Under the pieces are notes generated by a model that was not told where the DNA came from, did no database searches, and saw only the letters and a list, made by a program, of their open reading frames with translations. From Schmidtea polychroa (Eukaryota): 64,000 nucleotides of DNA. Positions 1-37,622 of the stretch are shown here, piece by piece (the first letter of the stretch is position 1; every line of letters starts with the position of its first letter). The stretch is from positions 175,696,312-175,760,311 of the forward strand of contig CM097886.1 of assembly GCA_044892525.1 (NCBI GenBank). Direction: 5' to 3'. Made by a program: the position numbers and the translations under genes.

Positions 1-3000
1 TGGATCTCGTATCGTTCCTCTCAATGTGTCTACAAGACCTTTTTCGATTTCTTCATCCAAAGTCAAATGTTTTGCGTCAGTTGAATATTCCATACTGATC
101 TTTTCTGATTCCGTTTGCTTTTCTTTATCTATTAGTTTTTTTTTGCTTCTTAGCAAAGCACTAATATTCTTACCGCTATCAAGCATTTCAGAAAGAGATA
201 CACTTTGTCCTTTCTCTGCATCATATATTGCGCTATTTTCTGCGTCAATTATTCCTCTTGCAATTGCTTCTTGTAATGACATTTCTTTTCCAGAAATTGG
301 ATCTCGTATCGTTCCTCTCAATGTGTCTACAAGACTTTTTTCGATTGCTTCATCCAAAGTCAAATGTTTTGCGTCAGTTGAATATTCCATACTGATCTTT
401 TCTGATTCCGTTTGCTTTTCTTTATCTATTCGTTCTTTTTCGCTTCTTAGCAAAGCACTAATAGTCTTACCGCTCTCAAGCATTTCAGAAAGAGATACAC
501 TTTGTCCTTTCTCTGCATCATATATTGCGCTATTTTCTGCGTCAATTATTCCTCTTGCAATTGCTTCTTGTAATGACATTTCTTTTCCAGAAATTGGATC
601 TCGTATCGTTCCTCTCAATGTGTCTGCAAGACCGTTTTCGATTGCTTTATCCAAAGTCAAATGTTTTGCGTCAGTTGAATATTCCATACTGATCTTTTCT
701 GATTCCGTTTGCTTTTCTTTATCTATTAGTTCTTTTTCGCTTCTTAGCAAAGCACTAATATTCTTACCGCTATCAAGCATTTCAGAAAGAGATACACTTT
801 GTCCTTTCTCTGCATCATATATTGCGCTATTTTCTGCGTCAATTATTCCTCTTGCAATTGCTTCTTGTAATGACATTTCTTTTCCAGAAATTGGATCTCG
901 TATCGTTCCTCTCAATGTGTCTACAAGACTTTTTTCGATTGCTTCATCCAAAGTCAAATGTTTTGCGTCAGTTGAATATTCCATACTGATCTTTTCTGAT
1001 TCCGTTTGCTTTTCTTTATCTATTCGTTCTTTTTCGCTTCTTAGCAAAGCACTAATATTCTTACCGCTCTCAAGCATTTCAGAAAGAGATACACTTTGTC
1101 CTTTCTCTGCATCATATATTGCGCTATTTTCTGCGTCAATTATTCCTCTTGCAATTGCTTCTTGTAATGACATTTCTTTTCCAGAAATTGGATCTCGTAT
1201 CGTTCCTCGCAATGTGTCTACAAGACTTTTTTCGATTGCTTCATCCAAAGTCAAATGTTTTGCGTCAGTTGAATATTCTATACTGATCATTTCTGATTCC
1301 GTTTGCTTTTCTTTATCTATTCGTTCTTTTTCGCTTCTTAACAAAGCACTAATATTCTTACCACTCTCAAGCATTTCAGAAAGAGATACACTTTGTCCTT
1401 TCTCTGCATCATATATTGCGCTATTTTCGGCGTCAATTATTCCTCTTGCAATTGCTTCTTGTAATGACATTTCTTTTCCAGAAATTGGATCTCGTATCGT
1501 TCCTCTCAATGTGTCTACAAGACCTTTTTCGATTGCTTCATCCAAAGTCAAATGTTTTGCGTCAGTTGAATATTCCATACTGATCTTTTCTGATTCCGTT
1601 TGCTTTTCTTTATCTATTCGTTCTTTTTCGCTTCTTAGCAAAGCACTAATATTCTTACCGCTATCAAGCATTTCAGAAAGAGATACACTTTGTCCTTTCT
1701 CTGCATCATATATTGCGCTATTTTCTGCGTCAATTATTCCTCTTGCAATTGCTTCTTGTAATGATATTTCTTTTCCAGAAATTAGATCTCGTATTGTTCC
1801 TCTCAATGTATTTACAATACCTTTTTCGATTGCTTCATCCAAAGTCAAATGTTTTGCGTCAGTTGAATATTCTATACTGATCTTTTCTGATTCCGTTTGC
1901 TTTTCTTTATCTATTCGTTCTTTTTCGCTTCTTAACAAAGCACTAATATTCTTACCGCTCTCAAGCATTTCAGAAAGAGATACACTTTGTCCTTTCTCTG
2001 CATCATATATTGCGCTATTTTCTGCGTCAATTATTCCTCTTGCAATTGCTTCTTGTAATGACATTTCTTTTCCAGAAATTGGATCTCGTATCGTTCCTCT
2101 CAATGTGTCTACAAGACCTTTTTCGATTGCTTCATCCAAAGTCAAATGTTTTGCGTCAGTTGAATATTCCATACTGATCTTTTCTGATTCCGTTTGCTTT
2201 TCTTTATCTATTCGTTCTTTTTCGCTTCTTAGCAAAGCACTAATATTCTTACCGCTCTCAAGCATTTCAGAAAGAGATACACTTTGTCCTTTCTCTGCAT
2301 CATATATTGCGCTATTTTCTGCGTCAATTATTCCTCTTGCAATTGCTTCTTGTAATGACATTTCTTTTCCAGAAATTGGATCTCGTATCGTTCCTCTCAA
2401 TGTGTCTACAAGACCTTTTTCGACTGCTTCATCCAAAGTCAAATGTTTTGCGTCAGTTGAATATTCTATACTGATCTTTTCTGATTCCGTTTGCTTTTCT
2501 TTATCTATTCGTTCTTTTTCGCTTCTTAGCAAAGCACTAATATTCTTACCGCTCTCAAGCATTTCACAAAGAGATACACTTTGTCCTTTCTCTGCATCAT
2601 ATATTGCGCTATTTTCTGCGTCAATTATTCTTCTTGCAATTGCTTCTTGTAATGACATTTCTTTTCCAGAAATTGGATCTCGTACCGTTCCTCTCAATGT
2701 GTCTACAAGACCTTTTTCGATTGCTTCATCCAAAGTCAAATGTTTTGCGTCAGTTGAATATTCCATACTGATCTTTTCTGATTCCGTTTGCTTTTCTTTA
2801 TCTATTCGTTCTTTTTCGCTTCTTAGCAAAGCACTAATATTCTTACCGCTCTCAAGCATTTCAGAAAGAGATACACTTTGTCCTTTCTCTGCATCATATA
2901 TTGCGCTATTTTCTACGTCAATTATTCCTCTTGCAATTGCTTCTTGTAATGACATTTCTTTTCCCGAAATTGGATCTCGTATCGTTCCTCTCAATGTGTC

Positions 3001-6000
3001 TACAAGACCTTTTTCGATTGTTTCATCCAAAGTCAAATGTTTTGCGTCAGTTGAATATTCCATACTGATCTTTTCTGATTCCGTTTGCTTTTCTTTATCT
3101 ATTCGTTCTTTTTCGCTTCTTAGCAAAGCACTAATATTCTTACCGCTCTCAAGCATTTCAGAAAGAGATACACTTTGTCCTTTCTCTGCATCATATATTG
3201 CGCTATTTTCTGCGTCAATTATTCCTCTTGCAATTGCTTCTTGTAATGACATTTCTTTTCCAGAAATTGGATCTCGTATCGTTCCTCTCAATGTATTTAC
3301 AAGACCTTTTTCGATTGCTTCATCCAAAGTCAAATGTTTTGCGTCAGTTGAATATTCCATACTGGTCTTTTCTGATTCCGTTTGCTTTTCTTTATCTATT
3401 CGTTCTTTTTCGCTTCTTAGCAAAGCACTAATATTCTTACCGCTCTCAAGCATTTCAGAAAGAGATACACTTTGTCCTTTCTCTGCATCATATATTGCGC
3501 TATTTTCTGCGTCAATTATTCCTCTTGCAATTGCTTCTTGTAATGACATTTCTTTTCCAGAAATTGGATCTCGTATCGTTCCTCGCAATGTGTCTACAAG
3601 ACCTTTTTCGATTGCTTCATCCAAAGTCAAATGTTTTGCGTCAGTTGAATATTCCATACTGATCTTTTCTGATTCCGTTTGCTTTTCTTTATCTATTCGT
3701 TCTTTTTCGCTTCTTAGCAAAGCACTAATATTCTTACCGCTCTCAAGCATTTCAGAAAGAGATACACTTTGTCCTTTCTCTGCATCATATATTGCGCTAT
3801 TTTCTGCGTCAATTATTCTTCTTGCAATTGCTTCTTGTAATGACATTTCTTTTCCAGAAATTGGATCTCGTATCGTTCCTCTCAATGTGTCTACAAGACC
3901 TTTTTCGATTGTTTCATCCAAAGTCAAATGTTTTGCGTCAGTTGAATATTCCATACTGATCTTTTCTGATTCCGTTTGCTTTTCTTTATCTATTCGTTCT
4001 TTTTCGCTTCTTAGCAAAGCACTAATATTCTTACCGCTCTCAAGCATTTCAGAAAGAGATACACTTTGTCCTTTCTCTGCATCATATATTGCGCTATTTT
4101 CTGCGTCAATTATTCCTCTTGCAATTGCTTCTTGTAATGACATTTCTTTTCCAGAAATTGGATCTCGTATCGTTCCTCTCAATGTGTCTACAAGACCTTT
4201 TTCGATTGCTTCATCCAAAGTCAAATGTTTTGCGTCAGTTGAATATTCCATACTGATCTTTTCTGATTCCGTTTGCTTTTCTTTATCTATTCGTTCTTTT
4301 TCGCTTCTTAGCAAAGCACTAATATTCTTACCGCTCTCAAGCATTTCAGAAAGAGATACACTTTGTCCTTTCTCTGCATCATATATTGCGCTATTTTCTG
4401 CGTCAATTATTCCTCTTGCAATTGCTTCTTGTAATGACATTTCTTTTCCAGAAATTGGATCTCGTATCGTTCCTCGCAATGTGTCTACAAGACCTTTTTC
4501 GATTGCTTCATCCAAAGTCAAATGTTTTGCGTCAGTTGAATATTCCATACTGATCTTTTCTGATTCCGTTTGCTTTTCTTTATCTAGTCGATCTTTTTCG
4601 CTTCTTAGCAAAGCACTAATATTCTTACCGCTATCAAGCATTTCAGAAAGAGATACACTTTGTCCTTTCTCTGCATCATATATTGCGCTATTTTCTGCGT
4701 CAATTATTCCTCTTGCAATTGCTTCTTGTAATGACATTTCTTTTCCAGAAATTGGATCTCGTATCGTTCCTCGCAATGTGTCTACAAGACCTTTTTCGAT
4801 TGCTTCATCCAAAGTCAAATGTTTTGCGTCAGTTGAATATTCCATACTGATCTTTTCTGATTCCGTTTGCTTTTCTTTATCTATTCGTTCTTTTTCGCTT
4901 CTTAGCAAAGCACTAATATTCTTACCGCTCTCAAGCATTTCAGAAAGAGATACACTTTGTCCTTTCTCTGCATCATATATTGCCCTATTTTCTGCGTCAA
5001 TTATTCCTCTTGCAATTGCTTCTTGTAATGACATTTCTTTTCCAGAATTTTGATCTCGTACCGTTCCTCTCAATATGTCTACAAGACCTTTTTCGATTGC
5101 TTCATCCAAAGTCAAATGTTTTGCGTCAGTTGAATATTCCATACTGATCTTTTCTGATTCCGTTTGCTTTTCTTTATCTATTCGTTGTTTTTCGCTTCTT
5201 AGCAAAGCACTAATATTCTTACCGCTCTCAAGCATTTCAGAAAGAGATACACTTTGTCCTTTCTCTGCATCATATATTGCGCTATTTTCTGCGTCAATTA
5301 TTCCTCTTGCAATTGCTTCTTGTAAAGACATTTCTTTTCCAGAAATTGGATCTCGTATCGTTCCTCGCAATGTGTCTACAAGACCTTTTTCGATTGCTTC
5401 ATCCAAAGTCAAATGTTTTGCGTCAGTTGAATATTCCATACTGATCTTTTCTGATTCCGTTTGCTTTTCTTTATCTATTCGTTCTTTTTCGCTTCTTAGC
5501 AAAGCACTAATATTCTTACCGCTCTCAAGCATTTCAGAAAGAGATACACTTTGTCCTTTCTCTGCATCATATATTGCGCTATTTTCTGCGTCAATTATTC
5601 CTCTTGCAATTGCTTCTTGTAATGACATTTCTTTTCCAGAAATTGGATCTCGTACCGTTCCTCTCAATGTGTCTACAAGACCTTTTTCGATTGCTTCATC
5701 CAAAGTCAAATGTTTTGCGTCAGTTGAATATTCCATACTGATCTTTTCTGATTCCGTTTGCTTTTCTTTATCTATTCGTTCTTTTTCGCTTCTTAGCAAA
5801 GCACTAATATTCTTACCGCTCTCAAGCATTTCAGAAAGAGATACACTTTGTCCTTTCTCTGCATCATATATTGCGCTATTTTCTGCGTCAATTATTCCTC
5901 TTGCAATTGCTTCTTGTAATGACATTTCTTTTCCAGAATTTTGATCTCGTACCGTTCCTCTCAATATGTCTACAAGACCTTTTTCGATTGCTTCATCCAA

Positions 6001-9000
6001 AGTCAAATGTTTTGCGTCAGTTGAATATTCCATACTGATCTTTTCTGATTCCGTTTGCTTTTCTTTATCTATTCGTTGTTTTTCGCTTCTTAGCAAAGCA
6101 CTAATATTCTTACCGCTCTCAAGCATTTCAGAAAGAGATACACTTTGTCCTTTCTCTGCATCATATATTGCGCTATTTTCTGCGTCAATTATTCCTCTTG
6201 CAATTGCTTCTTGTAAAGACATTTCTTTTCCAGAAATTGGATCTCGTATCGTTCCTCGCAATGTGTCTACAAGACCTTTTTCGATTGCTTCATCCAAAGT
6301 CAAATGTTTTGCGTCAGTTGAATATTCCATACTGATCTTTTCTGATTCCGTTTGCTTTTCTTTATCTATTCGTTCTTTTTCGCTTCTTAGCAAAGCACTA
6401 ATATTCTTACCGCTCTCAAGCATTTCAGAAAGAGATACACTTTGTCCTTTCTCTGCATCATATATTGCGCTATTTTCTGCGTCAATTATTCCTCTTGCAA
6501 TTGCTTCTTGTAATGACATTTCTTTTCCAGAAATTGGATCTCGTACCGTTCCTCTCAATGTGTCTACAAGACCTTTTTCGATTGCTTCATCCAAAGTCAA
6601 ATGTTTTGCGTCAGTTGAATATTCCATACTGATCTTTTCTGATTCCGTTTGCTTTTCTTTATCTATTCGTTCTTTTTCGCTTCTTAGCAAAGCACTAATA
6701 TTCTTACCGCTCTCAAGCATTTCAGAAAGAGATACACTTTGTCCTTTCTCTGCATCATATATTGCGCTATTTTCTGCGTCAATTATTCCTCTTGCAATTG
6801 CTTCTTGTAATGACATTTCTTTTCCAGAAATTGGATCTCGTACCGTTCCTCTCAATGTGTCTACAAGACCTTTTTCGATTGCTTCATCCAAAGTCAAATG
6901 TTTTGCGTCAGTTGAATATTCCATACTGATCTTTTCTGATTCCGTTTGCTTTTCTTTATCTATTCGTTCTTTTTCGCTTCTTAGCAAAGCACTAATATTC
7001 TTACCGCTCTCAAGCATTTCAGAAAGAGATACACTTTGTCCTTTCTCTGCATCATATATTGCGCTATTTTCTGCGTCAATTATTCCTCTTGCAATTGCTT
7101 CTTGTAATGACATTTCTTTTCCAGAAATTGGATCTCGTATCGTTCCTCTCAATGTGTCTACAAGACCTTTTTCGATTGCTTCATCCAAAGTCAAATGTTT
7201 TGCGTCAGTTGAATATTCCATACTGATCTTTTCTGATTCCGTTTCCTTTTCTTTATCTATTCGTTCTTTTTCGCTTCTTAGCAAAGCACTAATATTCTTC
7301 CCGCTCTCAAGCATTTCAGAAAGAGATACACTTTGTCCTTTCTCTGCATCATATATTGCGCTATTTTCTGCGTCAATTATTCCTCTTGCAATTGCTTCTT
7401 GTAATGACATTTCTTTTCCAGAAATTGGATCTCGTATCGTTCCTCTCAATGTGTCTACAAGACCTTTTTCGATTGCTTCATCCAAAGTCAAATGTTTTGC
7501 GTCAGTTGAATATTCCATACTGATCTTTTCTGATTCCGTTTGCTTTTCTTTATCTATTCGTTCTTTTTCGCTTCTTAGCAAAGCACTAATATTCTTCCCG
7601 CTCTCAAGCATTTCAGAAAGAGATACACTTTGTCCTTTCTCTGCATCATATATTGCGCTATTTTCTGCGTCAATTATTCCTCTTGCAATTGCTTCTTGTA
7701 ATGACATTTCTTTTCCAGAAATTGGATCTCGTATCGTTCCTCTCAATGTGTCTACAAGACCTTTTTCGATTGCTTTATCCAAAGTCAAATGTTTTGCGTC
7801 AGTTGAATATTCCATACTGATCTTTTCTGATTCCGTTTGCTTTTCTTTATCTATTCGTTCTTTTTCGCTTCTTAGCAAAGCACTAATATTCTTACCGCTC
7901 TCAAGCATTTCAGAAAGAGATACACTTTGTCCTTTCTCTGCATCATATATTGCGCTATTTTCTGCGTCAATTATTCCTCTTGCAATTGCTTCTTGTAAAG
8001 ACATTTCTTTTCCAGAAATTGGATCTCGTATCGTTCCTCGCAATGTATTTACAAGACCTTTTTCGATTGCTTCATCCAAAGTCAAATGTTTTGCGTCAGT
8101 TGAATATTCCATACTGATCTTTTCTGATTCCGTTTGCTTTTCTTTATCTATTCGTTCTTTTTCGCTTCTTAGCAAAGCACTAATATTCTTACCGCTCTCA
8201 AGCATTTCAGAAAGAGATACACTTTGTCCTTTCTCTGCATCATATATTGCGCTATTTTCTGCGTCAATTATTCCTCTTGCAATTGCTTCTTGTAATGACA
8301 TTTCTTTTCCAGAAATTGGATCTCGTATCGTTCCTCTCAATGTGTCTACAAGACCTTTTTCGATTGCTTTATCCAAAGTCAAATGTTTTGCGTCAGTTGA
8401 ATATTCCATACTGATCTTTTCTGATTCCGTTTGCTTTTCTTTATCTATTCGTTCTTTTTCGCTTCTTAGCAAAGAACTAATATTCTTACCGCTCTCAAGC
8501 ATTTCAGAAAGAGATACACTTTGTCCTTTCTCTGCATCATATATTGCGCTATTTTCTGCGTCAATTATTCCTCTTGCAATTGCTTCTTGTAATGACATTT
8601 CTTTTCCAGAAATTGGATCTCGTACCATTCCTCTCAATGTGTCTACAAGACCTTTTTCGATTGCTTCATCCAAAGTCAAATGTTTTGCGTCAGTTGAATA
8701 TTCCATACTGATCTTTTCTGATTCCGTTTGCTTTTCTTTATCTATTCGTTCTTTTTCGCTTCTTAGCAAAGCACTAATATTCTTACCGCTCTCAAGCATT
8801 TCAGAAAGAGATACACTTTGTCCTTTCTCTGCATCATATATTGCGCTATTTTCTGCGTCAATTATTCCTCTTGCAATTGATTCTTGTAAAGACATTTGTT
8901 TTCCAGAAATTGGATCTCGTATCGTTCCTCTCAATGTATTTACAAGACCTTTTTCGATTGCTTCATCCAAAGTCAAATGTTTTGCGTCAGTTGAATATTC

Positions 9001-21000: not shown

Positions 21001-24000
21001 TTTCTCTGCATCATATATTGCGCTATTTTCTGCGTCAATTATTCCTCTTGCAATTGCTTCTTGTAATGACATTTCTTTTCCAGAAATTGGATCTCGTATC
21101 GTTCCTCGCAATGTGTCTACAAGACCTTTTTCGATTGCTTCATCCAAAGTCAAATGTTTTGCGTCAGTTGAATATTCCATACTGATCTTTTCTGATTCCG
21201 TTTGCTTTTCTTTATCTATTCGTTCTTTTTCGCTTCTTAGCAAAGCACTAATATTCTTACCGCTCTCAAGCATTTCAGAAAGAGATACACTTTGTCCTTT
21301 CTCTGCATCATATATTGCGAAATTTTCTGCGTCAATTATTCCTCCTGCAATTGCTTCTTGTAAAGACATTTCTTTTCCAGAAATTGGATCTCGTATCGTT
21401 CCTCGCAATGTATTTACAAGACCTTTTTCGATTGCTTCATCCAAAGTCAAATGTTTTGCGTCAGTTGAATATTCCATACTGATCTTTTCTGATTCTGTTT
21501 GCTTTTCTTTATCTATTCGTTCTTTTTCGCTTCTTAGCAAAGCACTAATATTCTTACCGCTCTCAAGCATTTCAGAAAGAGATACACTTTGTCCTTTCTC
21601 TGCATCATATATTGCGCTATTTTCTGCGTCAATTATTCCTCTTGCAATTGCTTCTTGTAATGACATTTCTTTTCCAGAAATTGGATCTCGTACCGTTCCT
21701 CTCAATGTGTCTACAAGACCTTTTTCGATTGTTTCATCCAAAGTCAAATGTTTTGCGTCAGTTGAATATTCCATACTGATCTTTTCTGATTCCGTTTGCT
21801 TTTCTTTATCTATTCGTTCTTTTTCGCTTCTTAGCAAAGCACTAATATTTTTACCGCTCTCAAGCATTTCAGAAAGAGATACACTTTGTCCTTTCTCTGC
21901 ATCATATATTGCGCTATTTTCTGCGTCAATTATTCCTCTTGCAATTGCTTCTTGTAATGACATTTCTTTTCCAGAAATTGGATCTCGTATCGTTCCTCTC
22001 AATGTGTCTACAAGACCTTTTTCGATTGCTTCATCCAAAGTCAAATGTTTTGCGTCAGTTGAATATTCCATACTGATCTTTTCTGATTCCGTTTGCTTTT
22101 CTTTATCTATTCGTTCTTTTTCGCTTCTTAGCAAAGCACTAATATTCTTACCGCTCTCAAGCATTTCAGAAAGAGATACACTTTGTCCTTTCTCTGCATC
22201 ATATATTGCGAAATTTTCTGCGTCAATTATTCCTCTTGCAATTGCTTCTTGTAAAGACATTTCTTTTCCAGAAATTGAATCTCGTATCGTTCCTCGCAAT
22301 GTATTTACAAGACCTTTTTCGATTGCTTCATCCAAAGTCAAATGTTTTGCGTCAGTTGAATATTCCATACTGATCTTTTCTGATTCCGTTTGCTTTTCTT
22401 TATCTATTCGTTCTTTTTCGCTTCTTAGCAAAGCACTAATATTCTTACCGCTCTCAAGCATTTCAGAAAGAGATACACTTTGTCCTTTCTCTGCATCATA
22501 TATTGCGCTATTTTCTGCGTCAATTATTCCTCTTGCAATTGCTTCTTGTAATGACATTTCTTTTCCAGAAATTGGATCTCGTACCGTTCCTCTCAATGTG
22601 TCTACAAGACCTTTTTCGATTGCTTCATCCAAAGTCAAATGTTTTGCGTCAGTTGAATATTCCATACTGATCTTTTCTGATTCCGTTTGCTTTTCTTTAT
22701 CTATTCGTTCTTTTTCGCTTCTTAGCAAAGCACTAATATTCTTACCGCTCTCAAGCATTTCAGAAAGAGATACACTTTGTCCTTTCTCTGCATCATATAT
22801 TGCGCTATTTTCAGCGTCAATTATTCCTCTTGCAATTGCTTCTTGTAATGACATTTCTTTTCCAGAAATTGGATCTCGTACCGTTCCTCTCAATGTGTCT
22901 ACAAGACCTTTTTCGATTGCTTCATCCAAAGTCAAATGTTTTGCGTCAGTTGAATATTCCATACTGATCTTTTCTGATTCCGTTTGCTTTTCTTTATCTA
23001 TTCGTTCTTTTTCGCTTCTTAGCAAAGCACTAATATTCTTACCGCTCTCAAGCATTTCAGAAAGAGATACACTTTGTCCTTTCTCTGCATCATATATTGC
23101 GCTATTTTCTGCGTCAATTATTCCTCTTGCAATTGCTTCTTGTAATGACATTTCTTTTCCAGAAATTGGATCTCGTACCGTTCCTCTCAATGTGTCTACA
23201 AGACCTTTTTCGATTGCTTCATCCAAAGTCAAATGTTTTGCGTCAGTTGAATATTCCATACTGATCTTTTCTGATTCCGTTTGCTTTTCTTTATCTATTC
23301 GTTCTTTTTCGCTTCTTAGCAAAGCACTAATATTCTTACCGCTCTCAAGCATTTCAGAAAGAGATACACTTTGTCCTTTCTCTGCATCATATATTGCGCT
23401 ATTTTCTGCGTCAATTATTCCTCTTGCAATTGCTTCTTGTAATGACATTTCTTTTCCAGAAATTGGATCTCGTACCGTTCCTCTCAATGTGTCTACAAGA
23501 CCTTTTTCGATTGTTTCATCCAAAGTCAAATGTTTTGCGTCAGTTGAATATTCCATACTGATCTTTTCTGATTCCGTTTGCTTTTCTTTATCTATTCGTT
23601 CTTTTTCGCTTCTTAGCAAAGCACTAATATTTTTACCGCTCTCAAGCATTTCAGAAAGAGATACACTTTGTCCTTTCTCTGCATCATATATTGCGCTATT
23701 TTCTGCGTCAATTATTCCTCTTGCAATTGCTTCTTGTAATGACATTTCTTTTCCAGAAATTGGATCTCGTATCGTTCCTCTCAATGTGTCTACAAGACCT
23801 TTTTCGATTGCTTCATCCAAAGTCAAATGTTTTGCGTCAGTTGAATATTCCATACTGATCTTTTCTGATTCCGTTTGCTTTTCTTTATCTATTCGTTCTT
23901 TTTCGCTTCTTAGCAAAGCACTAATATTCTTACCGCTCTCAAGCATTTCAGAAAGAGATACACTTTGTCCTTTCTCTGCATCATATATTGCGAAATTTTC

Positions 24001-27000
24001 TGCGTCAATTATTCCTCTTGCAATTGCTTCTTGTAAAGACATTTCTTTTCCAGAAATTGGATCTCGTATCGTTCCTCGCAATGTATTTACAAGACCTTTT
24101 TCGATTGCTTCATCCAAAGTCAAATGTTTTGCGTCAGTTGAATATTCCATACTGATCTTTTCTGATTCCGTTTGCTTTTCTTTATCTATTCGTTCTTTTT
24201 CGCTTCTTAGCAAAGCACTAATATTCTTACCGCTCTCAAGCATTTCAGAAAGAGATACACTTTGTCCTTTCTCTGCATCATATATTGCGCTATTTTCTGC
24301 GTCAATTATTCCTCTTGCAATTGCTTCTTGTAATGACATTTCTTTTCCAGAAATTGGATCTCGTACCGTTCCTCTCAATGTGTCTACAAGACCTTTTTCG
24401 ATTGCTTCATCCAAAGTCAAATGTTTTGCGTCAGTTGAATATTCCATACTGATCTTTTCTGATTCCGTTTGCTTTTCTTTATCTATTCGTTCTTTTTCGC
24501 TTCTTAGCAAAGCACTAATATTCTTACCGCTCTCAAGCATTTCAGAAAGAGATACACTTTGTCCTTTCTCTGCATCATATATTGCGCTATTTTCAGCGTC
24601 AATTATTCCTCTTGCAATTGCTTCTTGTAATGACATTTCTTTTCCAGAAATTGGATCTCGTACCGTTCCTCTCAATGTGTCTACAAGACCTTTTTCGATT
24701 GTTTCATCCAAAGTCAAATGTTTTGCGTCAGTTGAATATTCCATACTGATCTTTTCTGATTCCGTTTGCTTTTCTTTATCTATTCGTTCTTTTTCGCTTC
24801 TTAGCAAAGCACTAATATTTTTACCGCTCTCAAGCATTTCAGAAAGAGATACACTTTGTCCTTTCTCTGCATCATATATTGCGCTATTTTCTGCGTCAAT
24901 TATTCCTCTTGCAATTGCTTCTTGTAATGACATTTCTTTTCCAGAAATTGGATCTCGTATCGTTCCTCTCAATGTGTCTACAAGACCTTTTTCGATTGCT
25001 TCATCCAAAGTCAAATGTTTTGCGTCAGTTGAATATTCCATACTGATCTTTTCTGATTCCGTTTGCTTTTCCTTATCTATTCGTTCTTTTTCGCTTCTTA
25101 GCAAAGCACTAATATTCTTACCGCTCTCAAGCATTTCAGAAAGAGATACACTTTGTCCTTTCTCTGCATCATATATTGCGAAATTTTCTGCGTCAATTAT
25201 TCCTCTTGCAATTGCTTCTTGTAAAGACATTTCTTTTCCAGAAATTGGATCTCGTATCGTTCCTCGCAATGTATTTACAAGACCTTTTTCGATTGCTTCA
25301 TCCAAAGTCAAATGTTTTGCGTCAGTTGAATATTCCATACTGATCTTTTCTGATTCCGTTTGCTTTTCTTTATCTATTCGTTCTTTTTCGCTTCTTAGCA
25401 AAGCACTAATATTCTTACCGCTCTCAAGCATTTCAGAAAGAGATACACTTTGTCCTTTCTCTGCATCATATATTGCGCTATTTTCTGCGTCAATTATTCC
25501 TCTTGCAATTGCTTCTTGTAATGACATTTCTTTTCCAGAAATTGGATCTCGTATCGTTCCTCTCAATGTGTCTACAAGACCTTTTTCGATTGTTTCATCC
25601 AAAGTCAAATGTTTTGCGTCAGTTGAATATTCCATACTGATCTTTTCTGATTCCGTTTGCTTTTCTTTATCTATTCGTTCTTTTTCGCTTCTTAGCAAAG
25701 CACTAATATTCTTACCGCTCTCAAGCATTTCAGAAAGAGATACACTTTGTCCTTTCTCTGCATCATATATTGCGCTATTTTCTGCGTCAATTATTCCTCT
25801 TGCAATTGCTTCTTGTAATGACATTTCTTTTCCAGAAATTGGATCTCGTACCGTTCCTCTCAATGTGTCTACAAGACCTTTTTCGATTGCTTCATCCAAA
25901 GTCAAATGTTTTGCGTCAGTTGAATATTCCATACTGATCTTTTCTGATTCCGTTTGCTTTTCTTTATCTATTCGTTCTTTTTCGCTTCTTAGCAAAGCAC
26001 TAATATTCTTACCGCTCTCAAGCATTTCAGAAAGAGATACACTTTGTCCTTTCTCTGCATCATATATTGCGCTATTTTCTGCGTCAATTATTCCTCTTGC
26101 AATTGCTTCTTGTAATGACATTTCTTTTCCAGAAATTGGATCTCGTACCGTTCCTCTCAATGTGTCTACAAGACCTTTTTCGATTGCTTCATCCAAAGTC
26201 AAATGTTTTGCGTCAGTTGAATATTCCATACTGATCTTTTCTGATTCCGTTTGCTTTTCTTTATCTATTCGTTCTTTTTCGCTTCTTAGCAAAGCACTAA
26301 TATTCTTACCGCTCTCAAGCATTTCAGAAAGAGATACACTTTGTCCTTTCTCTGCATCATATATTGCGCTATTTTCTGCGTCAATTATTCCTCTTGCAAT
26401 TGCTTCTTGTAATGACATTTCTTTTCCAGAAATTGGATCTCGTATCGTTCCTCGCAATGTGTCTACAAGACCTTTTTCGATTGCTTCATCCAAAGTCAAA
26501 TGTTTTGCGTCAGTTGAATATTCCATACTGATCTTTTCTGATTCCGTTTGCTTTTCTTTATCTATTCGTTCTTTTTCGCTTCTTAGCAAAGCACTAATAT
26601 TCTTACCGCTCTCAAGCATTTCAGAAAGAGATACACTTTGTCCTTTCTCTGCATCATATATTGCGCTATTTTCTGCGTCAATTATTCCTCTTGCAATTGC
26701 TTCTTGTAATGACATTTCTTTTCCAGAAATTGGATCTCGTATCGTTCCTCTCAATGTGTCTACAAGACCTTTTTCGATTGTTTCATCCAAAGTCAAATGT
26801 TTTGCGTCAGTTGAATATTCCATACTGATCTTTTCTGATTCCGTTTGCTTTTCTTTATCTATTCGTTCTTTTTCGCTTCTTAGCAAAGCACTAATATTCT
26901 TACCGCTCTCAAGCATTTTAGAAAGAGATACACTTTGTCCTTTCTCTGCATCATATATTGCGCTATTTTCTGCGTCAATTATTCCTCTTGCAATTGCTTC

Positions 27001-30000
27001 TTGTAATGACATTTCTTTTCCAGAAATTGGATCTCGTATCGTTCCTCTCAATGTGTCTACAAGACCTTTTTCGATTGCTTCATCCAAAGTCAAATGTTTT
27101 GCGTCAGTTGAATATTCCATACTGATCTTTTCTGATTCCGTTTGCTTTTCTTTATCTATTCGTTCTTTTTCGCTTCTTAGCAAAGCACTAATATTCTTAC
27201 CGCTCTCAAGCATTTCAGAAAGAGATACACTTTGTCCTTTCTCTGCATCATATATTGCGCTATTTTCTGTGTCAATTATTCCTCTTGCAATTGCTTCTTG
27301 TAATGACATTTCGTTTCCAGAAATTGGATCTCGTATCGTTCCTCTCAATGTGTCTACAAGACCTTTTTCGATTGTTTCATCCAAAGTCAAATGTTTTGCG
27401 TCAGTTGAATATTCCATACTGATCTTTTCTGATTCCGTTTGCTTTTCTTTATCTATTCGTTCTTTTTCGCTTCTTAGCAAAGCACTAATATTCTTACCGC
27501 TCTCAAGCATTTCAGAAAGATATACACTTTGTCCTTTCTCTGCATCATATATTGCGCTATTTTCTGCGTCAATTATTCCTCTTGCAATCGCTTCTTGTAA
27601 TGACATTTCTTTTCCAGAAATTGGATCTCGTATCGTTCCTCGCAATGTGTCTACAAGACCTTTTTCGATTGCTTCATCCAAAGTCAAATGTTTTGCGTCA
27701 GTTGAATATTCCATACTGATCTTTTCTGATTCCGTTCGCTTTTCTTTATCTATTCGTTCTTTTTCGCTTCTTAGCAAAGCACTAATATTCTTACCGCTCT
27801 CAAGCATTTCAGAAAGAGATACACTTTGTCCTTTCTCTGCATCATATATTGCGCTATTTTCTGCGTCAATTATTCCTCTTGCAATTGCTTTTTGTAATGA
27901 CATTTCTTTTCCAGAAATTGGATCTCGTATCGTTCCTCTCAATGTGTCTACAAGACCTTTTTCGATTGTTTCATCCAAAGTCAAATGTTTTGCGTCAGTT
28001 GAATATTCCATACTGATCTTTTCTGATTCCGTTTGCTTTTCTTTATCTATTCGTTCTTTTTCGCTTCTTAGCAAAGCACTAATATTCTTACCGCTCTCAA
28101 GCATTTCAGAAAGAGATACACTTTGTCCTTTCTCTGCATCATATATTGCGCTATTTTCTGCGTCAATTATTCCTCTTGCAATCGCTTCTTGTAATGACAT
28201 TTCTTTTCCAGAAATTGGATCTCGTATCGTTCCTCGCAATGTGTCTACAAGACCTTTTTCGATTGCTTCATCCAAAGTCAAATGTTTTGCGTCAGTTGAA
28301 TATTCCATACTGATCTTTTCTGATTCCGTTTGCTTTTCTTTATTTATTCGTTCTTTTTCGCTTCTTAGCAAAGCACTTATATTCTTACCGCTCTCAAGCA
28401 TTTCAGAAAGAGATACACTTTGTCCTTTCTCTGCATCATATATTGCGCTATTTTCTGCGTCAATTATTCCTCTTGCAATTGCTTCTTGTAATGACATTTC
28501 TTTTCCAGAAATTGGATCTCGTATCGTTCCTCTCAATGTGTCTACAAGACCTTTTTCGATTGCTTCATCCAAAGTCAAATGTTTTGCGTCAGTTGAATAT
28601 TCCATACTGATCTTTTCTGATTCCGTTTGCTTTTCTTTATCTATTCGTTCTTTTTCGCTTCTTAGCAAAGCACTAATATTCTTACCGCTCTCAAGCATTT
28701 CAGAAAGAGATACACTTTGTCCTTTCTCTGCATCATATATTGCGCTATTTTCTGCGTCAATTATTCCTCTTGCAATTGCTTCTTGTAATGACATTTCTTT
28801 TCCAGAAATTGGATCTCGTACCGTTCCTCTCAATGTGTCTACAAGACCTTTTTCGATTGCTTCATCCAAAGTCAAATGTTTTGCGTCAGTTGAATATTCC
28901 ATACTGATCTTTTCTGATTCCGTTTGCTTTTCTTTATCTATTCGTTCTTTTTCGCTTCTTAACAAAGCACTAATATTCTTACCGCTCTCAAGCATTTCAG
29001 AAAGAGATACACTTTGTCCTTTCTCTGCATCATATATTGCGCTATTTTCTGCGTCAATTATTCCTCTTGCAATTGCTTCTTGTAATGACATTTCTTTTCC
29101 AGAAATTGGATCTCGTATCGTTCCTCTCAATGTGTCTACAAGACCTTTTTCGATTGCTTCATCCAAAGTCAAATGTTTTGCGTCAGTTGAATATTCCATA
29201 CTGATCTTTTCTGATTCCGTTTGCTTTTCTTTATCTATTCGTTCTTTTTCGCTTCTTAGCAAAGCACTAATATTCTTACCGCTCTCAAGCATTTCAGAAA
29301 GAGATACACTTTGTCCTTTCTCTGCATCATATATTGCGCTATTTTCTGCGTCAATTATTCCTCTTGCAATTGCTTCTTGTAATGACATTTCTTTTCCAGA
29401 AATTGGATCTCGTATCGTTCCTCTCAATGTGTCTACAAGACCTTTTTCGATTGCTTCATCCAAAGTCAAATGTTTTGCGTCAGTTGAATATTCCATACTG
29501 ATCTTTTCTGATTCCGTTTGCTTTTCTTTATCTATTCGTTCTTTTTCGCTTCTTAACAAAGCACTAATATTCTTACCGCTCTCAAGCATTTCAGAAAGAG
29601 ATACACTTTGTCCTTTCTCTGCATCATATATTGCGCTATTTTCTGCGTCAATTATTCCTCTTGCAATTGCTTCTTGTAATGACATTTCTTTTCCAGAAAT
29701 TGGATCTCGTATCGTTCCTCTCAATGTGTCTACAAGACCTTTTTCGATTGCTTCATCCAAAGTCAAATGTTTTGCGTCAGTTGAATATTCCATATTGATC
29801 TTTTCTGATTCCGTTTGCTTTTCTTTATCTATTCGTTCTTTTTCGCTTCTTAGCAAAGCACTAATATTCTTACCGCTCTCAAGCATTTCAGAAAGAGATA
29901 CACTTTGTCCTTTCTCTGCATCATATATTGCGCTATTATCTGCGTCAATTATTCCTCTTGCAATTGCTTCTTGTAATGACATTTCTTTTCCAGAAATTGG

Positions 30001-30434
30001 ATCTCGTATCGTTCCTCTCAATGTGTCTACCAGACCTTTTTCGATTGCTTCATCCAAAGTCAAATGTTTTGCGTCAGTTGAATATTCCATACTGATCTTT
30101 TCTGATTCCGTTTGCTTTTCTTTATCTATTCGTTCTTTTTCGCTTCTTAACAAAGCACTAATATTCTTACCGCTCTCAAGCATTTCAGAAAGAGATACAC
30201 TTTGTCCTTTCTCTGCATCATATATTGCGCTATTTTCTGCGACAATTATTCCTCTTGCAATTGCTTCTTGTAATGACATTTCTTTTCCAGAAATTGGATC
30301 TCGTACCGTTCCTCTCAATGTGTCTACAATACCTTTTTCGATTGCTTCATCCAAAGTCAAATGTTTTGCGTCAGTTGAATATTCCATACTGATCTTTTCT
30401 GATTCCGTTTGCTTTTCTTTATCTATTCGTTCTT
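1..30434. repeat. Coding tandem array, 297-bp unit, 102 complete units plus a partial unit in window
   Basis: The motif tggatctcg lies at 1, 298, 595 ... and at 30295 (= 1 + 102 x 297), so there is no net indel. Units differ only by scattered substitutions. Confidence 0.98.
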
Positions 30435-31080
30435 TATATTTTAGTTCCTTTTCTTTTTTTTCGAAAGTTAGATATTTTCTCTTTCTTTTTTCTTCTTTGT
30501 ATTCTGAACTATTATCGTCATCGAATAATATTCTTGGTTTTATGATATCATCTGCTAAGTTTATTTTTCTTTTCTTTTTTTCTTTTTCGTTTTTATTTTC
30601 TTCCTCATTTTTTACGTTTTCTCTGGCTAAATACTCTTGTGTTATCTCTATAATATCTTTTAATGGAATATTGTTCCTTAATAATATTTGCAACGATACT
30701 ATATTTCCACTTCGTATTTCACGAAATAACGTTTTCTCTTCATCTATTAGATTTTCTTTTAAAGCTTCATACAAACATTTTATTTTTCCAGTTTTTGCCA
30801 GTTTTATTGTCATATTTTTTGGATTAATCAATTTTTGTTTCAATGCCGTTATTAAATTTATTTTTCTCTCAGTTCTATCATTTTCCTCAATAGTTATTGT
30901 TTCAGTTAATTTAGCAAATAATATTTCCTCTGATGTATCTTGTATTGGAATATATGAATATAAAAATGATGATAAAATATTTTCACTTTCCTTCAATTCA
31001 GGTTTATTTAATAATTTATATTTATCATTTATTATATTTAATAAATCATCTACATCATTTGTAACATTAGACAAATTTCG
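1..31080 (-). CDS. Giant coding exon (at least 10,360 codons, 3' end outside window): about 215 unique residues, then 102+ tandem 99-aa plectin-like modules
   Basis: Acceptor ttttatttttaaAG at 31081-31082, phase 0, matches the phase-0 donor at 31707. The frame reads RNLSNVTNDVDDLL... and then LRGTIRDPISGKEMSLQEAIARGIIDAENSAIYDAEKGQSVSLSEMLESGKNISALLRSEKERIDKEKQTESEKISMEYSTDAKHLTLDEAIEKGLVDT repeated. None of the variants I translated creates a stop. Confidence 0.9.
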
Positions 31081-31707
31081 CTTTAAAAATAAAAATAAAA
31101 TTAATTATGAACTATTATTTATTTATTTTTCTTACTCAAAAATAGAGCTACAGATATTTAATTTCCCCTAGAATTCTGTATGTCGTTTTTATCGCGACAA
31201 AATTTTATTAGTAATCTGTAGCAGGGTGAGATGAAGAATTCTTTCTTTATGAATAGAGAACTTTGTTAAAAACGTCATAGCTAAAGTTCTTTTCCATCAA
31301 AGTTAACAAGTTGTATAGAAGAGAAAGTATCTAAGACAATTTTGCAATTGCTCAACCGTAACAATGAAAATAAATATCCCTAATTTAGAATTACAATTAT
31401 TATGGTAATAGTATTTGTAGTTTCCCCTTAAATATTGCACCGAAGCAGGCTGGGAACCAAATAAATGCAGAGTGCTATTGGGAGAGCTGTAATTATTTAT
31501 CCTATTATATTTTGGTTTTCTTATTTCTGTAGCTTTATTTTTTATAATATAAATGATAAAAGTGTATCCAAATAAAAATATTCACTTTGCTAGATATAAA
31601 TTTGTCGAACAAAAATTTTTACGAAAATATCTTACCATTATCAATTAGTAACCTTAATAACACGGATACACTTTCGGAAAAAAATTAAAAAAATTAATTT
31701 TAATTAC

Positions 31708-34700: not shown

Positions 34701-35724
34701 ATGGAAATTCATCTTTCTCCAATACGATCTGTAAAATCGAGATGGGCTTCGATAAAATGCCTTCCTGGCGAGCGTAATGTATAGGAATATATGAATTTCG
34801 ATTGTGATCGAAAATGTTTCCTGATTCCGGATCGAAAAATTTATTATTAACTGCTTCTTTCGTTGTTAGGTGAAAAGAGTTTTCACTAGGATCAACGAAT
34901 AATATCTCTGAAATATCATCATTGATATATTGGTATCGAATGGCGTCGGTGTATTTCAACTCGGTATTTGTAATTGGATCAAGAAATTTTATATGTTTGT
35001 CTGAAATCGGATTGAACAAATTCAAATCTACTGAATCTGAAAGACTTAGTAGAGGGGGCTGGATTTTTAATTCTTTTGGTGAATAAATGGCCGAAATAAC
35101 TGTGGGAGGGGAATGCAACAATTCAATAGATGAGATCATTAAACAGTTCAAATAGCCACCGACTTTTCTATCAACAATCTGTGAATTGACAGCTTTCGAA
35201 ATGGTCAAGGGTTCGAAGAAACAATCGACATTGAAAGTTCCATTGAAAATATTGAAAATGTTTAATTTCATCATGTCAATAATAGAGAGTTTTTCACATT
35301 TGTTAAATATTCTCAACTCAGAAAGAATGTTGTAGGTTTTTCTCATTATGATTCCGTCTTTTAAAGACTCTTCCAATGTGGACGACTGCATTTCATCGGA
35401 GGCATTCGGTGAATTCGGATTCAATTTGATTATTCGACAACGGAAACAATCTCCGACAGATATTGGAGAAATAGTTTCGGATAAGAGATTGGAGAAATAC
35501 CAAAGATTTGATAATTGGCAACGACTTAAGTTTGAAATGATTTCAATCGAATCTTCTTGGAAGGATTGTTTGGTTGATTTATCAAAAAAGATTTCAGAAT
35601 TTTCTTCAATCTCGCTCAGTTCTCGGAATCTGTTGATTTCGACATTTTCCGTTTTAAATGTATGAATTCTTTCCGGTTTCTTCGAGGATTTCGTTAAAAC
35701 AGGTCTCGCTTGATCGGAAAGATT
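31708..35724 (-). CDS. Plectin-repeat (plakin repeat domain) exon, 4,017 bp / 1,339 codons, phase 0/0
   Basis: Acceptor aaatAG at 35725 and donor CAG|GTAATT at 31707. Many plectin-repeat motifs, e.g. DPISGEIISPMDAIEKGLVD, LTILQAINQNLIDIKTG, ICLREAIENGLFDP. Corresponds to track ORF 31654..35424. Confidence 0.93.
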
Positions 35725-35778
35725 CTATTTATTAGAAAAAATTAACAATAATGTTTTATCAAACGTTTCTAAATATAC

Positions 35779-35979
35779 CTTTTGGCATTCAGTCAATCTT
35801 TCATATAATAAATCTGATAGATTATTAAAATCGTTGTTGAGCTTCTTTATTTCACATGATACCCAATCATGGGCATTTTGAATACGACTCCTTTTCGTGT
35901 ATCCGAAATAATCTTGATTACTACCACCAATTTGACTTTGTATTTCATTGTGATAGTTTTTGAATATGTCTTCATATTT
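35779..35979 (-). CDS. Spectraplakin exon (rod to plectin-repeat linker)
   Basis: Acceptor ttacAG at 35980 and donor AAG|GTATAT at 35778. Reads KYEDIFKNYHNEIQSQIGG...LTECQK, phase 0/0. Confidence 0.85.
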
Positions 35980-36105
35980 CTGTAAGAAGAGAGAATTATT
36001 GATATTGTATTTGCATATTAATGTTTTATTTAGAATTCTGGATATCAGAAGTACTCAAGAAGAAGCCGTTACTAGAGGGCTTCTGGTCGCATTTTGTTGA
36101 CTTCG

Positions 36106-37321: not shown

Positions 37322-37574
37322 CTGTAATAAATTCAAGAAATATGTGGCGGATTTATTGATTTCATCGATTTCTGGTTTGTATTTATTGATTTCTAATTGA
37401 AAATTATTGATTTTCTTCATCAACGATTCAATATTTTTAGACTCAAAGACATTATTTGGAATATTAATCTGGGATTTCACAGTCGTTTGCAGGCCAATAA
37501 TCCATGCTTGAATGGTTTTCAACTCATTTTTCAACCCCAAATATTGGTTGCTGCACTCATTCACGTGACTCAAT
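37322..37574 (-). CDS. Spectraplakin exon (spectrin-like repeat)
   Basis: Reads LSHVNECSNQYLGLKNELKTIQAWII...LLQ. Phase 2 acceptor, phase 0 donor CAG|GTAATT. Confidence 0.87.
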
Positions 37575-37622
37575 CTAGAAACAAATTTGTTTTTATCTCA
37601 CGAAACTATTAATTTTACTGAC

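What the first reader, a model, noticed from the sequence alone, without database searches (positions are those of the whole stretch)
1..31080. Hidden exon of at least 31 kb: a spectraplakin with 102+ tandem 99-aa plectin-like modules, missed by the ORF track
Seen: the minus-strand frame is open from a phase-0 acceptor at 31080 to the window edge. It splices in phase to the upstream plectin-repeat exon and contains 102 indel-free 297-bp units. Established: spectraplakins (Drosophila Shot, vertebrate MACF1b/dystonin-b, C. elegans VAB-10A) carry plectin repeats in large exons. The largest well-known human coding exons (TTN exon 363, MUC16 exon 3, AHNAK) are roughly 17-22 kb. Inference: this is an unusually large, recently amplified, minisatellite-like exon that would give a protein of more than 12,900 residues with a very long modular spacer or multivalent scaffold. 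I do not recognise such an expansion in described plakins.
Basis: partly seen in the sequence, partly recalled or inferred. Interest (0 to 1): 0.92.

Follow-up and report, generated by a model that had tools for sequence, protein, structure and literature searches.

The report
Giant 47-kb plakin-repeat exon in spectraplakin
A cytoskeletal linker gene (a spectraplakin) in this AT-rich, probably planarian genome carries one 47.4-kb coding exon made of 157 nearly identical 99-residue plakin-repeat modules; it is transcribed, kept open by selection and can be skipped by splicing, so the gene may make a protein of roughly 23,000 residues.

Summary
The minus-strand frame is open from window 31104 past the window edge. 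With flanking DNA, the exon runs from acceptor 31080 to a GAA|GTAAGT donor at window -16316 (C2:175679995). That is 47,397 nt, 15,799 codons, phase 0 at both ends: a 210-aa lead-in, 157 indel-free 99-aa units and a short tail.

- **Family:** the units hit Pfam Plectin. The locus has the full spectraplakin order: CH, SH3/spectrin plakin domain, plectin exon, giant exon, spectrin rod, EF-hand, GAR.
- **Copy number:** 103 distinct unit variants, 155 genomic copies of a unit 28-mer (all here), and roughly 140-220x contig depth in DNA-like runs argue against assembly inflation.
- **Selection:** no stop among 106 variant events (6.1 expected, P≈0.002). The antisense open frame has 4 (4.2 expected).
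- **RNA:** RNA-like runs cover lead-in and unit but not the intron. One RNA contig joins donor 31708 directly to the first rod exon, so the exon is an optional cassette.
- **Not shown:** the 31708→31080 junction; the tool masks that site.

Closest precedents are Drosophila Shot's 10.5-kb plakin-repeat exon and single-exon epiplakin. The scan's reader of the adjacent window noted the same array's continuation.

The parts
1..31080 (-). In-window part of the giant exon. The whole exon runs from window 31080 to window -16316 (C2:175727391..175679995): 47,397 nt, 15,799 codons, phase 0/0.
   Evidence: Open frame; acceptor at 31080; donor GAA|GTAAGT outside the window.
1..30450 (-). 297-bp (99-codon) tandem array. 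About 102.5 units lie in the window, 157 in all, with no indel. Each unit is a roughly 65-aa plakin-repeat module plus a roughly 30-aa charged helical linker.
   Evidence: TRF; register and unit count; Pfam Plectin 98 bits for 3 units; AF2 model with pLDDT 85.
30451..31080 (-). Unique 210-aa lead-in of the giant exon, containing degenerate plakin-repeat-like motifs and a K/E-rich stretch.
   Evidence: Translation. Covered by contigs of RNA-like runs X7 and X12, whose intron depth is 0. A few distant plakin-repeat proteins have their best-matching stretch beginning in query residues 60-164, inside the lead-in.
31081..31707 (-). 627-nt GT..AG intron between the upstream plectin exon and the giant exon.
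   Evidence: Sequence. Depth is 0 in RNA-like runs X7 and X12 but full in DNA-like runs X2 and X5.
31708..35724 (-). Upstream plakin-repeat exon, non-repetitive. Its donor at 31708 is used in RNA.
   Evidence: Pfam Plectin 135.7 bits; 92% identity to P0001; X7 RNA contig of 8,325 nt.
35725..35778 (-). 54-nt mini-intron, spliced out in RNA.
   Evidence: Joint 35724->35779 (CT..AC on the + strand) in the X7 contig.
35779..35988 (-). 5' piece of the plakin-repeat exon region, upstream of the mini-intron.
   Evidence: X7 contig; tblastn with P0001.
37322..46844 (-). Plakin-domain exons (SH3_10 and spectrin repeats), at approximately 37322-37819, 37857-38168, 39632-39961, 40014-40496, 42217-42438, 42497-42601 and 46389-46844.
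   Evidence: tblastn with P0001, 93-97% identity except about 56% for the 46389-46844 piece, which adjoins the masked N runs. P0001 carries PF17902 and PF00435.
48873..49283 (-). Calponin-homology (CH) domain exon of the actin-binding region.
   Evidence: PF00307, 65 bits; genome scan hit at C2:175745097-175745510.

Best explanation
This is a genuine, alternatively spliced giant cassette exon of a spectraplakin gene. It was created by recent tandem amplification, and is kept uniform by ongoing homogenisation, of a 297-bp unit that encodes a small plakin-repeat module plus a charged helical linker.

When the exon and the 257-codon tail exon after it are included, about 16,000 residues (the exon alone is 1.75 MDa, pI 4.8) are inserted between the plakin domain/first plectin exon and the spectrin-repeat rod. 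That gives a CH...GAR protein of very roughly 22,000-23,000 residues. When they are skipped, a conventional Shot/MACF1-type spectraplakin results.

The insert is most likely a very long, acidic, beads-on-a-string spacer or multivalent scaffold, with a contour length of the order of 1 micrometre. It would set the distance between the actin-binding end and the microtubule-binding end. It is unlikely to be a set of canonical intermediate-filament-binding plakin repeat domains (PRDs).

Shown: the anatomy, the family, transcription of lead-in and unit, the skipping isoform, the copy number, and selection for an open frame. Inferred: use of the 31080 acceptor and the -16316 donor, translation, the total protein size, and the mechanical spacer role.
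For: Anatomy: open frame of 15,814 codons; exon 47,397 nt, phase 0/0; 157 units without indel.

Family: Pfam Plectin in the units and the upstream exon; sequence similarity to desmoplakin and envoplakin PRDs; the top fold matches are plakin-repeat structures, though weak.

Spectraplakin layout on one strand: CH, SH3_10/spectrin, spectrin repeats, weak EF-hand and GAS2 at 69 bits downstream.

RNA:
- Run X7 has spliced contigs, with the 54-nt intron removed and intron depth 0. It therefore behaves as RNA.
- X7 holds the lead-in at depth 11.7 and the unit at 7,260, about 47 per copy, against 30.6 for the neighbouring exon.
- X12 holds the lead-in at depth 47-216 with intron depth 0.
- An X12 contig starts exactly 2 nt upstream of the 31080 acceptor. 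That is where a de Bruijn contig should break if a spliced predecessor ending in AG exists (inference).
- Poly-T loose ends placed before 30147 and 30449 on the + strand suggest a minus-sense RNA; one poly-T end (behind 30420) points the other way.

Skipping isoform: the X7 contig joins 31708 to the exon starting at window -17587.

Selection: 0 of 106 variant events create a stop in the sense frame (6.1 expected, P=0.002), against 4 observed and 4.2 expected in the antisense open frame; there are no indels.

3' end: the GTAAGT donor, the mini-intron and the tail exon are conserved in a distant relative, where the reading frame changes across the mini-intron.

Array in another species or strain: P0008 has 11.3 units of 99 aa with 6 fixed consensus differences, indicating concerted evolution with the frame kept.

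Copy number: 103 distinct unit sequences. A unit 28-mer occurs 155 times in the genome, all in this array. Unit-to-flank contig depth is about 204x in run X5 and 140-220x in X2.

Structure: the AF2 model of two units has compact modules with pLDDT above 90, joined by a 29-residue helix. The module has net charge -6.
Against: - No read or contig was seen crossing 31708|31080, -16316|-16371 or -17141|-17587. The tool masks 31075-31140.
- In X7 the long contig passes from donor 31708 straight into the rod exon without breaking, so inclusion from that donor is at most a minor form in that sample.
- All runs were Logan contigs whose RNA or DNA label is a guess. Contig depths are not a reliable measure of expression or copy number.
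- Missense variation among units is nearly neutral (dN/dS about 0.8).
- No protein of this size, and no protein containing the lead-in, exists in the searched libraries.
- There is no protein-level evidence.
Confidence: 0.72

Rival explanations
1. The array-containing exon acts as an alternative 3'-terminal coding exon. The 54-nt mini-intron after it is not removed, translation stops at the TAG eight codons past the GTAAGT, and the product is a rod-less, GAR-less isoform ending in plakin repeats, like VAB-10A or BPAG1e.
For: An in-frame TAG lies 24 nt after the donor. In C. elegans the plakin-repeat exon encodes an alternative C-terminus (PMC2173965). No RNA junction from the array tail to downstream exons was seen.
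Against: The donor, mini-intron and following tail exon are conserved in a distant relative, where the frame shifts across the mini-intron, so splicing is needed there. The tail exon is open for 257 codons, in phase, and ends at a good donor in phase with the rod exon. The first AATAAA/ATTAAA signals lie about 1 kb downstream, after the tail exon. A 54-nt intron is demonstrably spliced elsewhere in this gene.
Confidence: 0.1
2. The array is an exon-derived coding-like minisatellite sitting in a 49-kb intron. It is transcribed, as a stable intronic, separate or antisense RNA, but is not translated as part of the spectraplakin. The open frame is a leftover of very recent amplification.
For: The only junction seen skips it. 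dN/dS among units is about 0.8. Units are 98% alike, so there has been little time for decay. No matching giant protein is in the public libraries. Unit depth in RNA is out of proportion to lead-in depth.
Against: The absence of stops is significant against an internal antisense control, and there are no indels in 46.6 kb. Both exon borders are canonical and phase 0. The lead-in and tail are unique sequence with coding character, and the tail is conserved. The neighbouring intron has zero depth while the array's per-copy depth equals or exceeds exon depth. A related species or strain keeps the same 99-aa frame with 6 fixed differences.
Confidence: 0.13
3. The length of the array is an assembly artefact, caused by over-expansion or mis-joining of a much shorter repeat.
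For: Near-identical 297-bp repeats are hard to assemble, and only contig-level depth was available, which the tool warns is not a copy number.
Against: There are 103 distinct unit sequences and many unique neighbour combinations, which fixes a lower bound near 100 copies. The unit 28-mer occurs 155 times, all in this one array and nowhere else in 781 Mb. Two DNA-like runs from different studies show unit-contig depth of about 140-220 times the flanks. The array-to-tail and unit-to-unit junctions are reproduced in those runs.
Confidence: 0.04

Closest known systems
Drosophila Short stop (Shot) plakin-repeat exon and 'gigantic' isoforms (Roper and Brown 2003, PMC2173965)
   Same: A spectraplakin locus with one very large exon of plakin repeats, placed between the plakin domain and the spectrin rod. 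Its inclusion is controlled by alternative splicing. The repeats are not organised as canonical 4.5-repeat PRDs. Inclusion gives a much longer protein.
   Different: Shot's exon is 10,497 nt with 33 diverged repeats and an 8,846-aa isoform. Here the exon is 47,397 nt with 157 near-identical 99-aa units (about 390 repeat motifs), shows concerted evolution, and predicts an isoform about 2.5 times longer. Shot's exon use has cDNA and in situ support; here the junctions are not yet seen.
Epiplakin (EPPK1)
   Same: A plakin built from tandem plakin-repeat modules encoded in a single huge exon. Repeat number differs between species, probably also within species, and is hard to determine by standard sequencing (PMC8782857).
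   Different: Epiplakin consists only of full PRDs, has no other domains and has no alternative splicing. From my own knowledge it has 13-16 PRDs and is roughly 500-725 kDa. Here the modules are smaller (about 2.5 repeat motifs), acidic and 157 in number, and they sit in an optional exon of a CH...GAR spectraplakin.
Vertebrate MACF1b / dystonin-b and C. elegans VAB-10A
   Same: Spectraplakin isoforms that carry plakin repeats through alternative exon use. In VAB-10A the repeats form an alternative C-terminus (and my own knowledge).
   Different: Those repeats are a handful of diverged PRDs, not a homogenised array. No comparable tandem amplification has been described for them.
Giant repetitive coding exons of secreted proteins: Chironomus Balbiani-ring genes, spider aggregate spidroins, MUC16 (own knowledge, not checked here)
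   Same: Exons of tens of kilobases made of near-identical in-frame tandem units that evolve in concert.
   Different: Those encode secreted structural or glue proteins of low complexity. This one encodes folded cytoskeletal modules in an intracellular linker and is an optional cassette.

Membership tests
Spectraplakin (Shot/MACF1/dystonin/VAB-10 type) | N-terminal calponin-homology actin-binding region | tested here: met
   PF00307 scores 65 bits at window 48873-49283, minus strand. Only one CH domain was found in the window; a second, CH1, was not located.
Spectraplakin (Shot/MACF1/dystonin/VAB-10 type) | Plakin domain (spectrin repeats with embedded SH3) | tested here: met
   P0001 maps at 93-97% identity to most exons between 37322 and 46844 (about 56% for the 46389-46844 piece, which adjoins masked Ns) and carries PF17902 (SH3_10) and PF00435.
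Spectraplakin (Shot/MACF1/dystonin/VAB-10 type) | Spectrin-repeat rod followed by EF-hands and a GAR/GAS2 microtubule-binding domain | tested here: met
   Spectrin scores 36.9-50.7 bits in three downstream exon pieces. GAS2 scores 69.4 bits at C2:175648101-175648217. EF-hand is only weak, at 18 bits and below the cut-off.
Spectraplakin (Shot/MACF1/dystonin/VAB-10 type) | All domains joined in one transcript | tested here: inconclusive
   One 8.3-kb RNA contig joins upstream exons and the plectin exon to the first rod exon. Continuity from CH to GAR, and inclusion of the giant exon, were not seen.
Plakin (plectin) repeat, Pfam PF00681 | Sequence match to the 38-39-aa repeat above the curated cut-off | tested here: met
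   98 bits for 3 units and 110 bits for lead-in plus units, against a cut-off of 20.5. The genome scan found 87 matches over the cut-off, all inside this array. The PDB sequence match to desmoplakin has E = 9.6e-8.
Canonical plakin repeat domain (PRD; desmoplakin/envoplakin type, IF-binding) | 4.5 repeats packed into one globular domain | tested here: not met
   The AF2 model shows roughly 65-aa modules (about 2.5 repeat motifs) separated by a 29-residue helix. Foldseek ranks PRD structures first, but only at E = 6.5e-3 and TM below 0.2.
Canonical plakin repeat domain (PRD; desmoplakin/envoplakin type, IF-binding) | Basic groove that binds intermediate-filament rods | tested here: not met
   The module has net charge -6 and the unit -7; the exon product has pI 4.76. 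Binding itself cannot be tested here.
Alternatively spliced cassette exon | Symmetric phase, canonical sites, and both skipping and inclusion forms seen in RNA | tested here: inconclusive
   Phase 0/0 and canonical AG and GTAAGT sites. The skipping form was seen directly. Inclusion is supported only by exon-like RNA coverage and contig break points.

The most novel reading that the evidence does not exclude
The included isoform is a roughly 23,000-residue, 2.5-MDa spectraplakin. Its 1.75-MDa, strongly acidic array of 157 module-plus-helix units would act as a micrometre-scale molecular tether or ruler between actin-anchored and microtubule-anchored ends, for example in epidermal, muscle-attachment or adhesive cells. 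Its length would be tuned by unequal crossing-over, so copy number would vary between strains. At 47.4 kb it would be among the largest, possibly the largest, coding exons described in an animal, and one of the largest proteins after titin.
Probability: 0.4. Interest if true: 0.82.

Novelty: new variant of a known kind. Interest (0 to 1): 0.7.

Why it matters
If the exon is translated, it pushes the known size range of cytoskeletal linkers and of coding exons well beyond current examples. It also gives a natural "length series" for asking how linker length matters in spectraplakin function. The organism appears to be a planarian (an inference), where RNAi against the unit versus the common exons is easy.

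It is also a clean case of concerted evolution inside a folded-domain protein. Missense changes drift while the reading frame is policed.

Practically, it shows that gene annotation and ORF tracks miss such exons. The protein libraries searched here hold only an 11-unit fragment (P0008).

Tried and rejected
- **Junction test with read laying:** the tool masks 31075-31140, and all runs were contigs rather than raw reads. The 31708->31080 junction could therefore be neither confirmed nor refuted.
- **Protein search with lead-in plus one unit:** no hit in the allowed length range.
- **Protein search with the tail exon:** only a distant genomic relative (P0155). This helped with conservation but not with RNA junctions.
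- **Exhaustive representative search:** one close fragment (P0008). All other hits are ordinary plakin-repeat proteins at 41% identity or less. There is no giant counterpart.
- **Pfam on the antisense 8,408-codon frame, the lead-in alone and the tail exon:** no family. The antisense ORF is rejected as a by-product of the repeat.
- **Higher-order repeat periodicity:** there is no fixed higher-order period, only local multi-unit duplications (runs of up to 5 identical units at lags of 4-11).
- **Fold search against PDB:** only weak matches. This is usable as evidence that the modules are not canonical PRDs, but not as strong evidence of fold identity.
- **Literature searches:** nothing on planarian spectraplakins, amplified plakin repeats or record-size exons.
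- **Organism name:** not established. A planarian such as Schmidtea is my inference from 32% GC, a 781-Mb genome in a few very large chromosomes, and the pattern of public runs.
- **dN/dS between species:** could not be computed, because no DNA is available for P0008.
Full report
**1. Observation**

The window is 32% G+C. On its minus strand, one frame is open from 31104 to base 1, which is 10,368 codons. Tandem Repeats Finder reports a single array at 1-30435: period 297, 102.5 copies, 98% matches, no indels. Printed in a 99-residue register, the translation shows the same unit throughout.

The donor is CAG|gtaatt at 31708/31707. The acceptor is tttttaaag|CGA at 31081/31080. Both are phase 0.

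**2. True extent**

The window is G000:C2:175696312-175760311. A genome scan with Pfam Plectin reported an open frame of 15,814 codons for every hit.

I fetched the flanking DNA. The frame runs on for 16.3 kb beyond the window edge and reaches a TAG at window -16340. Eight codons before that stop there is a consensus donor, ATT GAA|GTAAGT, in phase 0.

The exon therefore spans window 31080 to -16316 (C2:175727391-175679995). That is 47,397 nt, exactly 15,799 codons, symmetric in phase. It consists of:
- a unique 210-aa lead-in;
- 157 units of 99 aa without a single indel, the last unit diverging after about residue 90;
- a short unique tail.

**3. What follows the exon**

The 54 nt after the donor contain the TAG and end in ttttctcag. 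The frame then reopens for 257 codons and ends at AAG|GTAAAT, phase 0. A 445-nt intron leads to an exon starting GGT GAT GCT (GDAPNVAKKYIEMV...) at window -17587.

This "tail exon" has no Pfam family. It has one homologue, P0155, at 38% identity, on a 1.3-kb Logan contig of a distant relative. In that contig the end of the preceding exon (...HHLFHYEEDSPVVSE|GTAAGT) and the tail exon lie in different frames. They are separated by a short GT...AG stretch. The donor, the mini-intron and the tail exon are therefore conserved, and in the relative they must be spliced. A 54-nt intron inside the upstream plectin exon (35725-35778) is removed in RNA of this organism, so introns of this size are functional here.

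**4. The gene**

The upstream 4.3-kb exon (31708-35988) and the units both hit Pfam Plectin, at 135.7 bits and at 98 bits for three units.

P0001, a 2,205-aa UniParc protein 92% identical to the upstream exon, maps onto exons between 46844 and 31705. It carries SH3_10 and spectrin domains. It ends in intron-like sequence after 31708.

The other domains are:
- a CH domain at 48873-49283;
- downstream exon pieces with spectrin repeats over the cut-off;
- a weak EF-hand;
- a GAS2/GAR domain of 69 bits at C2:175648101.

All lie on the minus strand in the canonical spectraplakin order. The gene spans more than 100 kb.

**5. RNA evidence (contigs only)**

Run X7 behaves as RNA. It has no depth on the 627-nt intron, and the 54-nt intron is spliced out. 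It contains an 8,325-nt contig that covers upstream exons and the plectin exon, and then continues for 28 nt that are not the intron and not the giant exon. Those letters occur once in the genome, at C2:175678697-175678723, which is the start of the first rod exon. Donor 31708 is therefore used, and one isoform skips the giant exon and the tail exon, an intron of about 49 kb.

The same run holds the lead-in (30430-30990) at depth 11.7. It holds unit contigs at about 7,260, roughly 47 per copy, against 30.6 for the neighbouring exon and 0-0.16 for the intron. Run X12, from the same study as X7, holds the lead-in at 47-216 and the unit at much greater depth, again with zero intron depth. Its contigs carry poly-T loose ends, two of which (before 30147 and 30449) are placed as expected for internal oligo-dT priming on a minus-sense RNA; a third (behind 30420) points the other way.

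An X12 contig begins exactly 2 nt upstream of the 31080 acceptor. A de Bruijn contig should break at that point if two predecessors both ending in AG exist, for example the intron and an exon ending in CAG. This is my inference, not a direct junction.

The tool masks 31075-31140, so the junction 31708|31080 was not testable.

One quantitative mismatch remains unexplained. In X7 the array's per-copy depth is at least equal to the flanking exon depth, although the contig through donor 31708 does not break there. Internal priming on the A-rich linker, another 5' exon, or extra copies in that strain could account for it.

**6. Is the copy number real?**

- Among the 157 units there are 103 distinct DNA sequences. 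The mean pairwise difference is 5.2 nt. There are local multi-unit duplications but no fixed higher-order period.
- A conserved unit 28-mer occurs 155 times in the 781-Mb assembly, all on this strand in this array.
- In DNA-like runs from two other studies, unit contigs are about 204x (X5) and 140-220x (X2) as deep as the unique flanks. The unit-to-unit and array-to-tail junctions are also reproduced.
- Contig depth is only a rough guide, but everything agrees with about 150-200 copies.

**7. Is it coding?**

The 155 core units carry 106 distinct variant events: 26 synonymous and 80 non-synonymous. The dN/dS ratio is about 0.8.

By count, 5.7% of possible single-base changes would create a stop in the sense frame. 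That predicts 6.1 stops, and none is seen (P = 0.002). The antisense frame, which also happens to be open in the consensus unit, has 4 stops against 4.2 expected. No indel exists in 46.6 kb.

Missense change is therefore nearly free, while frame-breaking change is removed. This is what one expects if the exon must be read through to reach the downstream domains. The antisense ORF has no Pfam match.

**8. Relatives**

An exhaustive search of 1.84 billion representative proteins found one close relative, P0008 (UniParc, 1,124 aa). It has 11.3 units of 99 aa at 88% identity. Its units share six residues that differ from the consensus here (R3T, S17L, K29H, I37M, M57I, E92K). This is the signature of concerted evolution with the period and the frame preserved.

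All other hits are ordinary invertebrate plakin-repeat proteins at 41% identity or less. Many of them have modules spaced about 90-105 residues apart. No giant counterpart, and no protein containing the lead-in, is present.

**9. Structure and likely mechanism**

An AlphaFold2 model of two units, built with a 92-row alignment, has mean pLDDT 85. Each unit forms a compact hairpin-helix module over residues 28-93 (pLDDT above 90). The modules are joined by a 29-residue E/K-rich helix, and pTM is 0.52, so the relative orientation is not fixed.

The best fold and sequence matches in the PDB are the plakin repeat domains (PRDs) of desmoplakin, envoplakin and periplakin. Global superposition is poor, however. 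The modules are not packed as 4.5-repeat PRDs, as was also noted for Shot (PMC2173965).

The module is acidic (net -6). The exon product is 1.75 MDa with pI 4.76. I therefore favour a long, charged, beads-on-a-string spacer or scaffold. My estimate is about 7 nm per unit and about 1.1 micrometres in all (inference). I do not favour 157 intermediate-filament-binding sites.

With the N-terminal part (more than 2,170 aa), the tail exon (257 aa) and a rod/GAR part of about 4,000-4,500 aa (a rough sum of open pieces), the inclusive isoform would have about 22,000-23,000 residues (inference).

**10. Comparison and novelty**

- **Shot.** It has a 10,497-nt plakin-repeat exon with 33 repeats at the same position. 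Inclusion is by alternative splicing and gives 8,846-aa isoforms.
- **Epiplakin.** It is encoded by one exon of tandem plakin repeat domains, whose number varies between species and probably within them.
- **Flatworm spectraplakins.** Plakin repeats in them have been noted in a survey (PMC9145010).
- **Literature.** I found nothing on planarian spectraplakins or on arrays like this one.

The kind is therefore known. The scale, the homogeneity, the small acidic module and the optional-cassette arrangement make this a new variant.

**11. Earlier notes of this scan**

Other notes mention repeated-exon arrays in other plakin genes of this genome. I did not test those.

**12. Verdict**

This is a real 47.4-kb, 157-unit, transcribed exon in a spectraplakin gene, kept open by selection, and it is an alternative cassette. 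Confidence is 0.72 that it is included in a translated mRNA. The missing piece is direct evidence for the junctions and for the protein.

Noticed in passing
window 35725-35778 (minus strand): A 54-nt GT..AG mini-intron inside the upstream plectin-repeat exon is spliced out in an RNA contig of run X7. A second 54-nt candidate mini-intron follows the giant exon, at window -16317..-16370.
   Followed up: partly
window 5945-31168 (+ strand): The antisense frame of the array is open for 8,408 codons (plus 1,683 and 296 more), has no Pfam match, and carries stops at the neutral rate. It is a by-product of the repeat and a trap for ORF-based gene finders.
   Followed up: yes
There is no significant Pfam match (only a chance-level hit at E = 0.075), and its link to this gene was not tested.
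   Followed up: no
G000: C3:85677512, C4:64251178, C1:179370860-179371099, C1:227151515-227151749: Four further GAS2/GAR-domain loci exist in the genome besides this gene. The genome therefore has several spectraplakin or GAS2-like genes. Other scan notes report repeated-exon arrays in some plakin genes.
   Followed up: no
L020:2138-2508 and L020:3116-3677 (window about -37500 and -36600); L018:3356-3601 and L018:7338-7735: Long trinucleotide microsatellites (runs read as poly-Y/L/I/N/V/C) lie within and beyond the rod-region introns.
   Followed up: no
L018:870-2040 (window about -58000 to -59100, minus strand): Open frames of 187-235 codons lie beyond the 3' end of the gene. They look like a transposase-type insertion (my impression, not scanned).
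   Followed up: no
window 30430-30990 against 31708-35724: The X7 RNA contig differs from the window at 12 of 561 positions in the lead-in, but at only 18 of about 4,000 in the upstream exon. The lead-in seems to vary more between strains or haplotypes.
   Followed up: no
runs X18-X22, X13, X24, X25: RNA-like runs labelled as three other organisms hold 6-19% of the sampled 31-mers of lead-in plus one unit. This suggests that near-identical units are expressed in related species.
   Followed up: no
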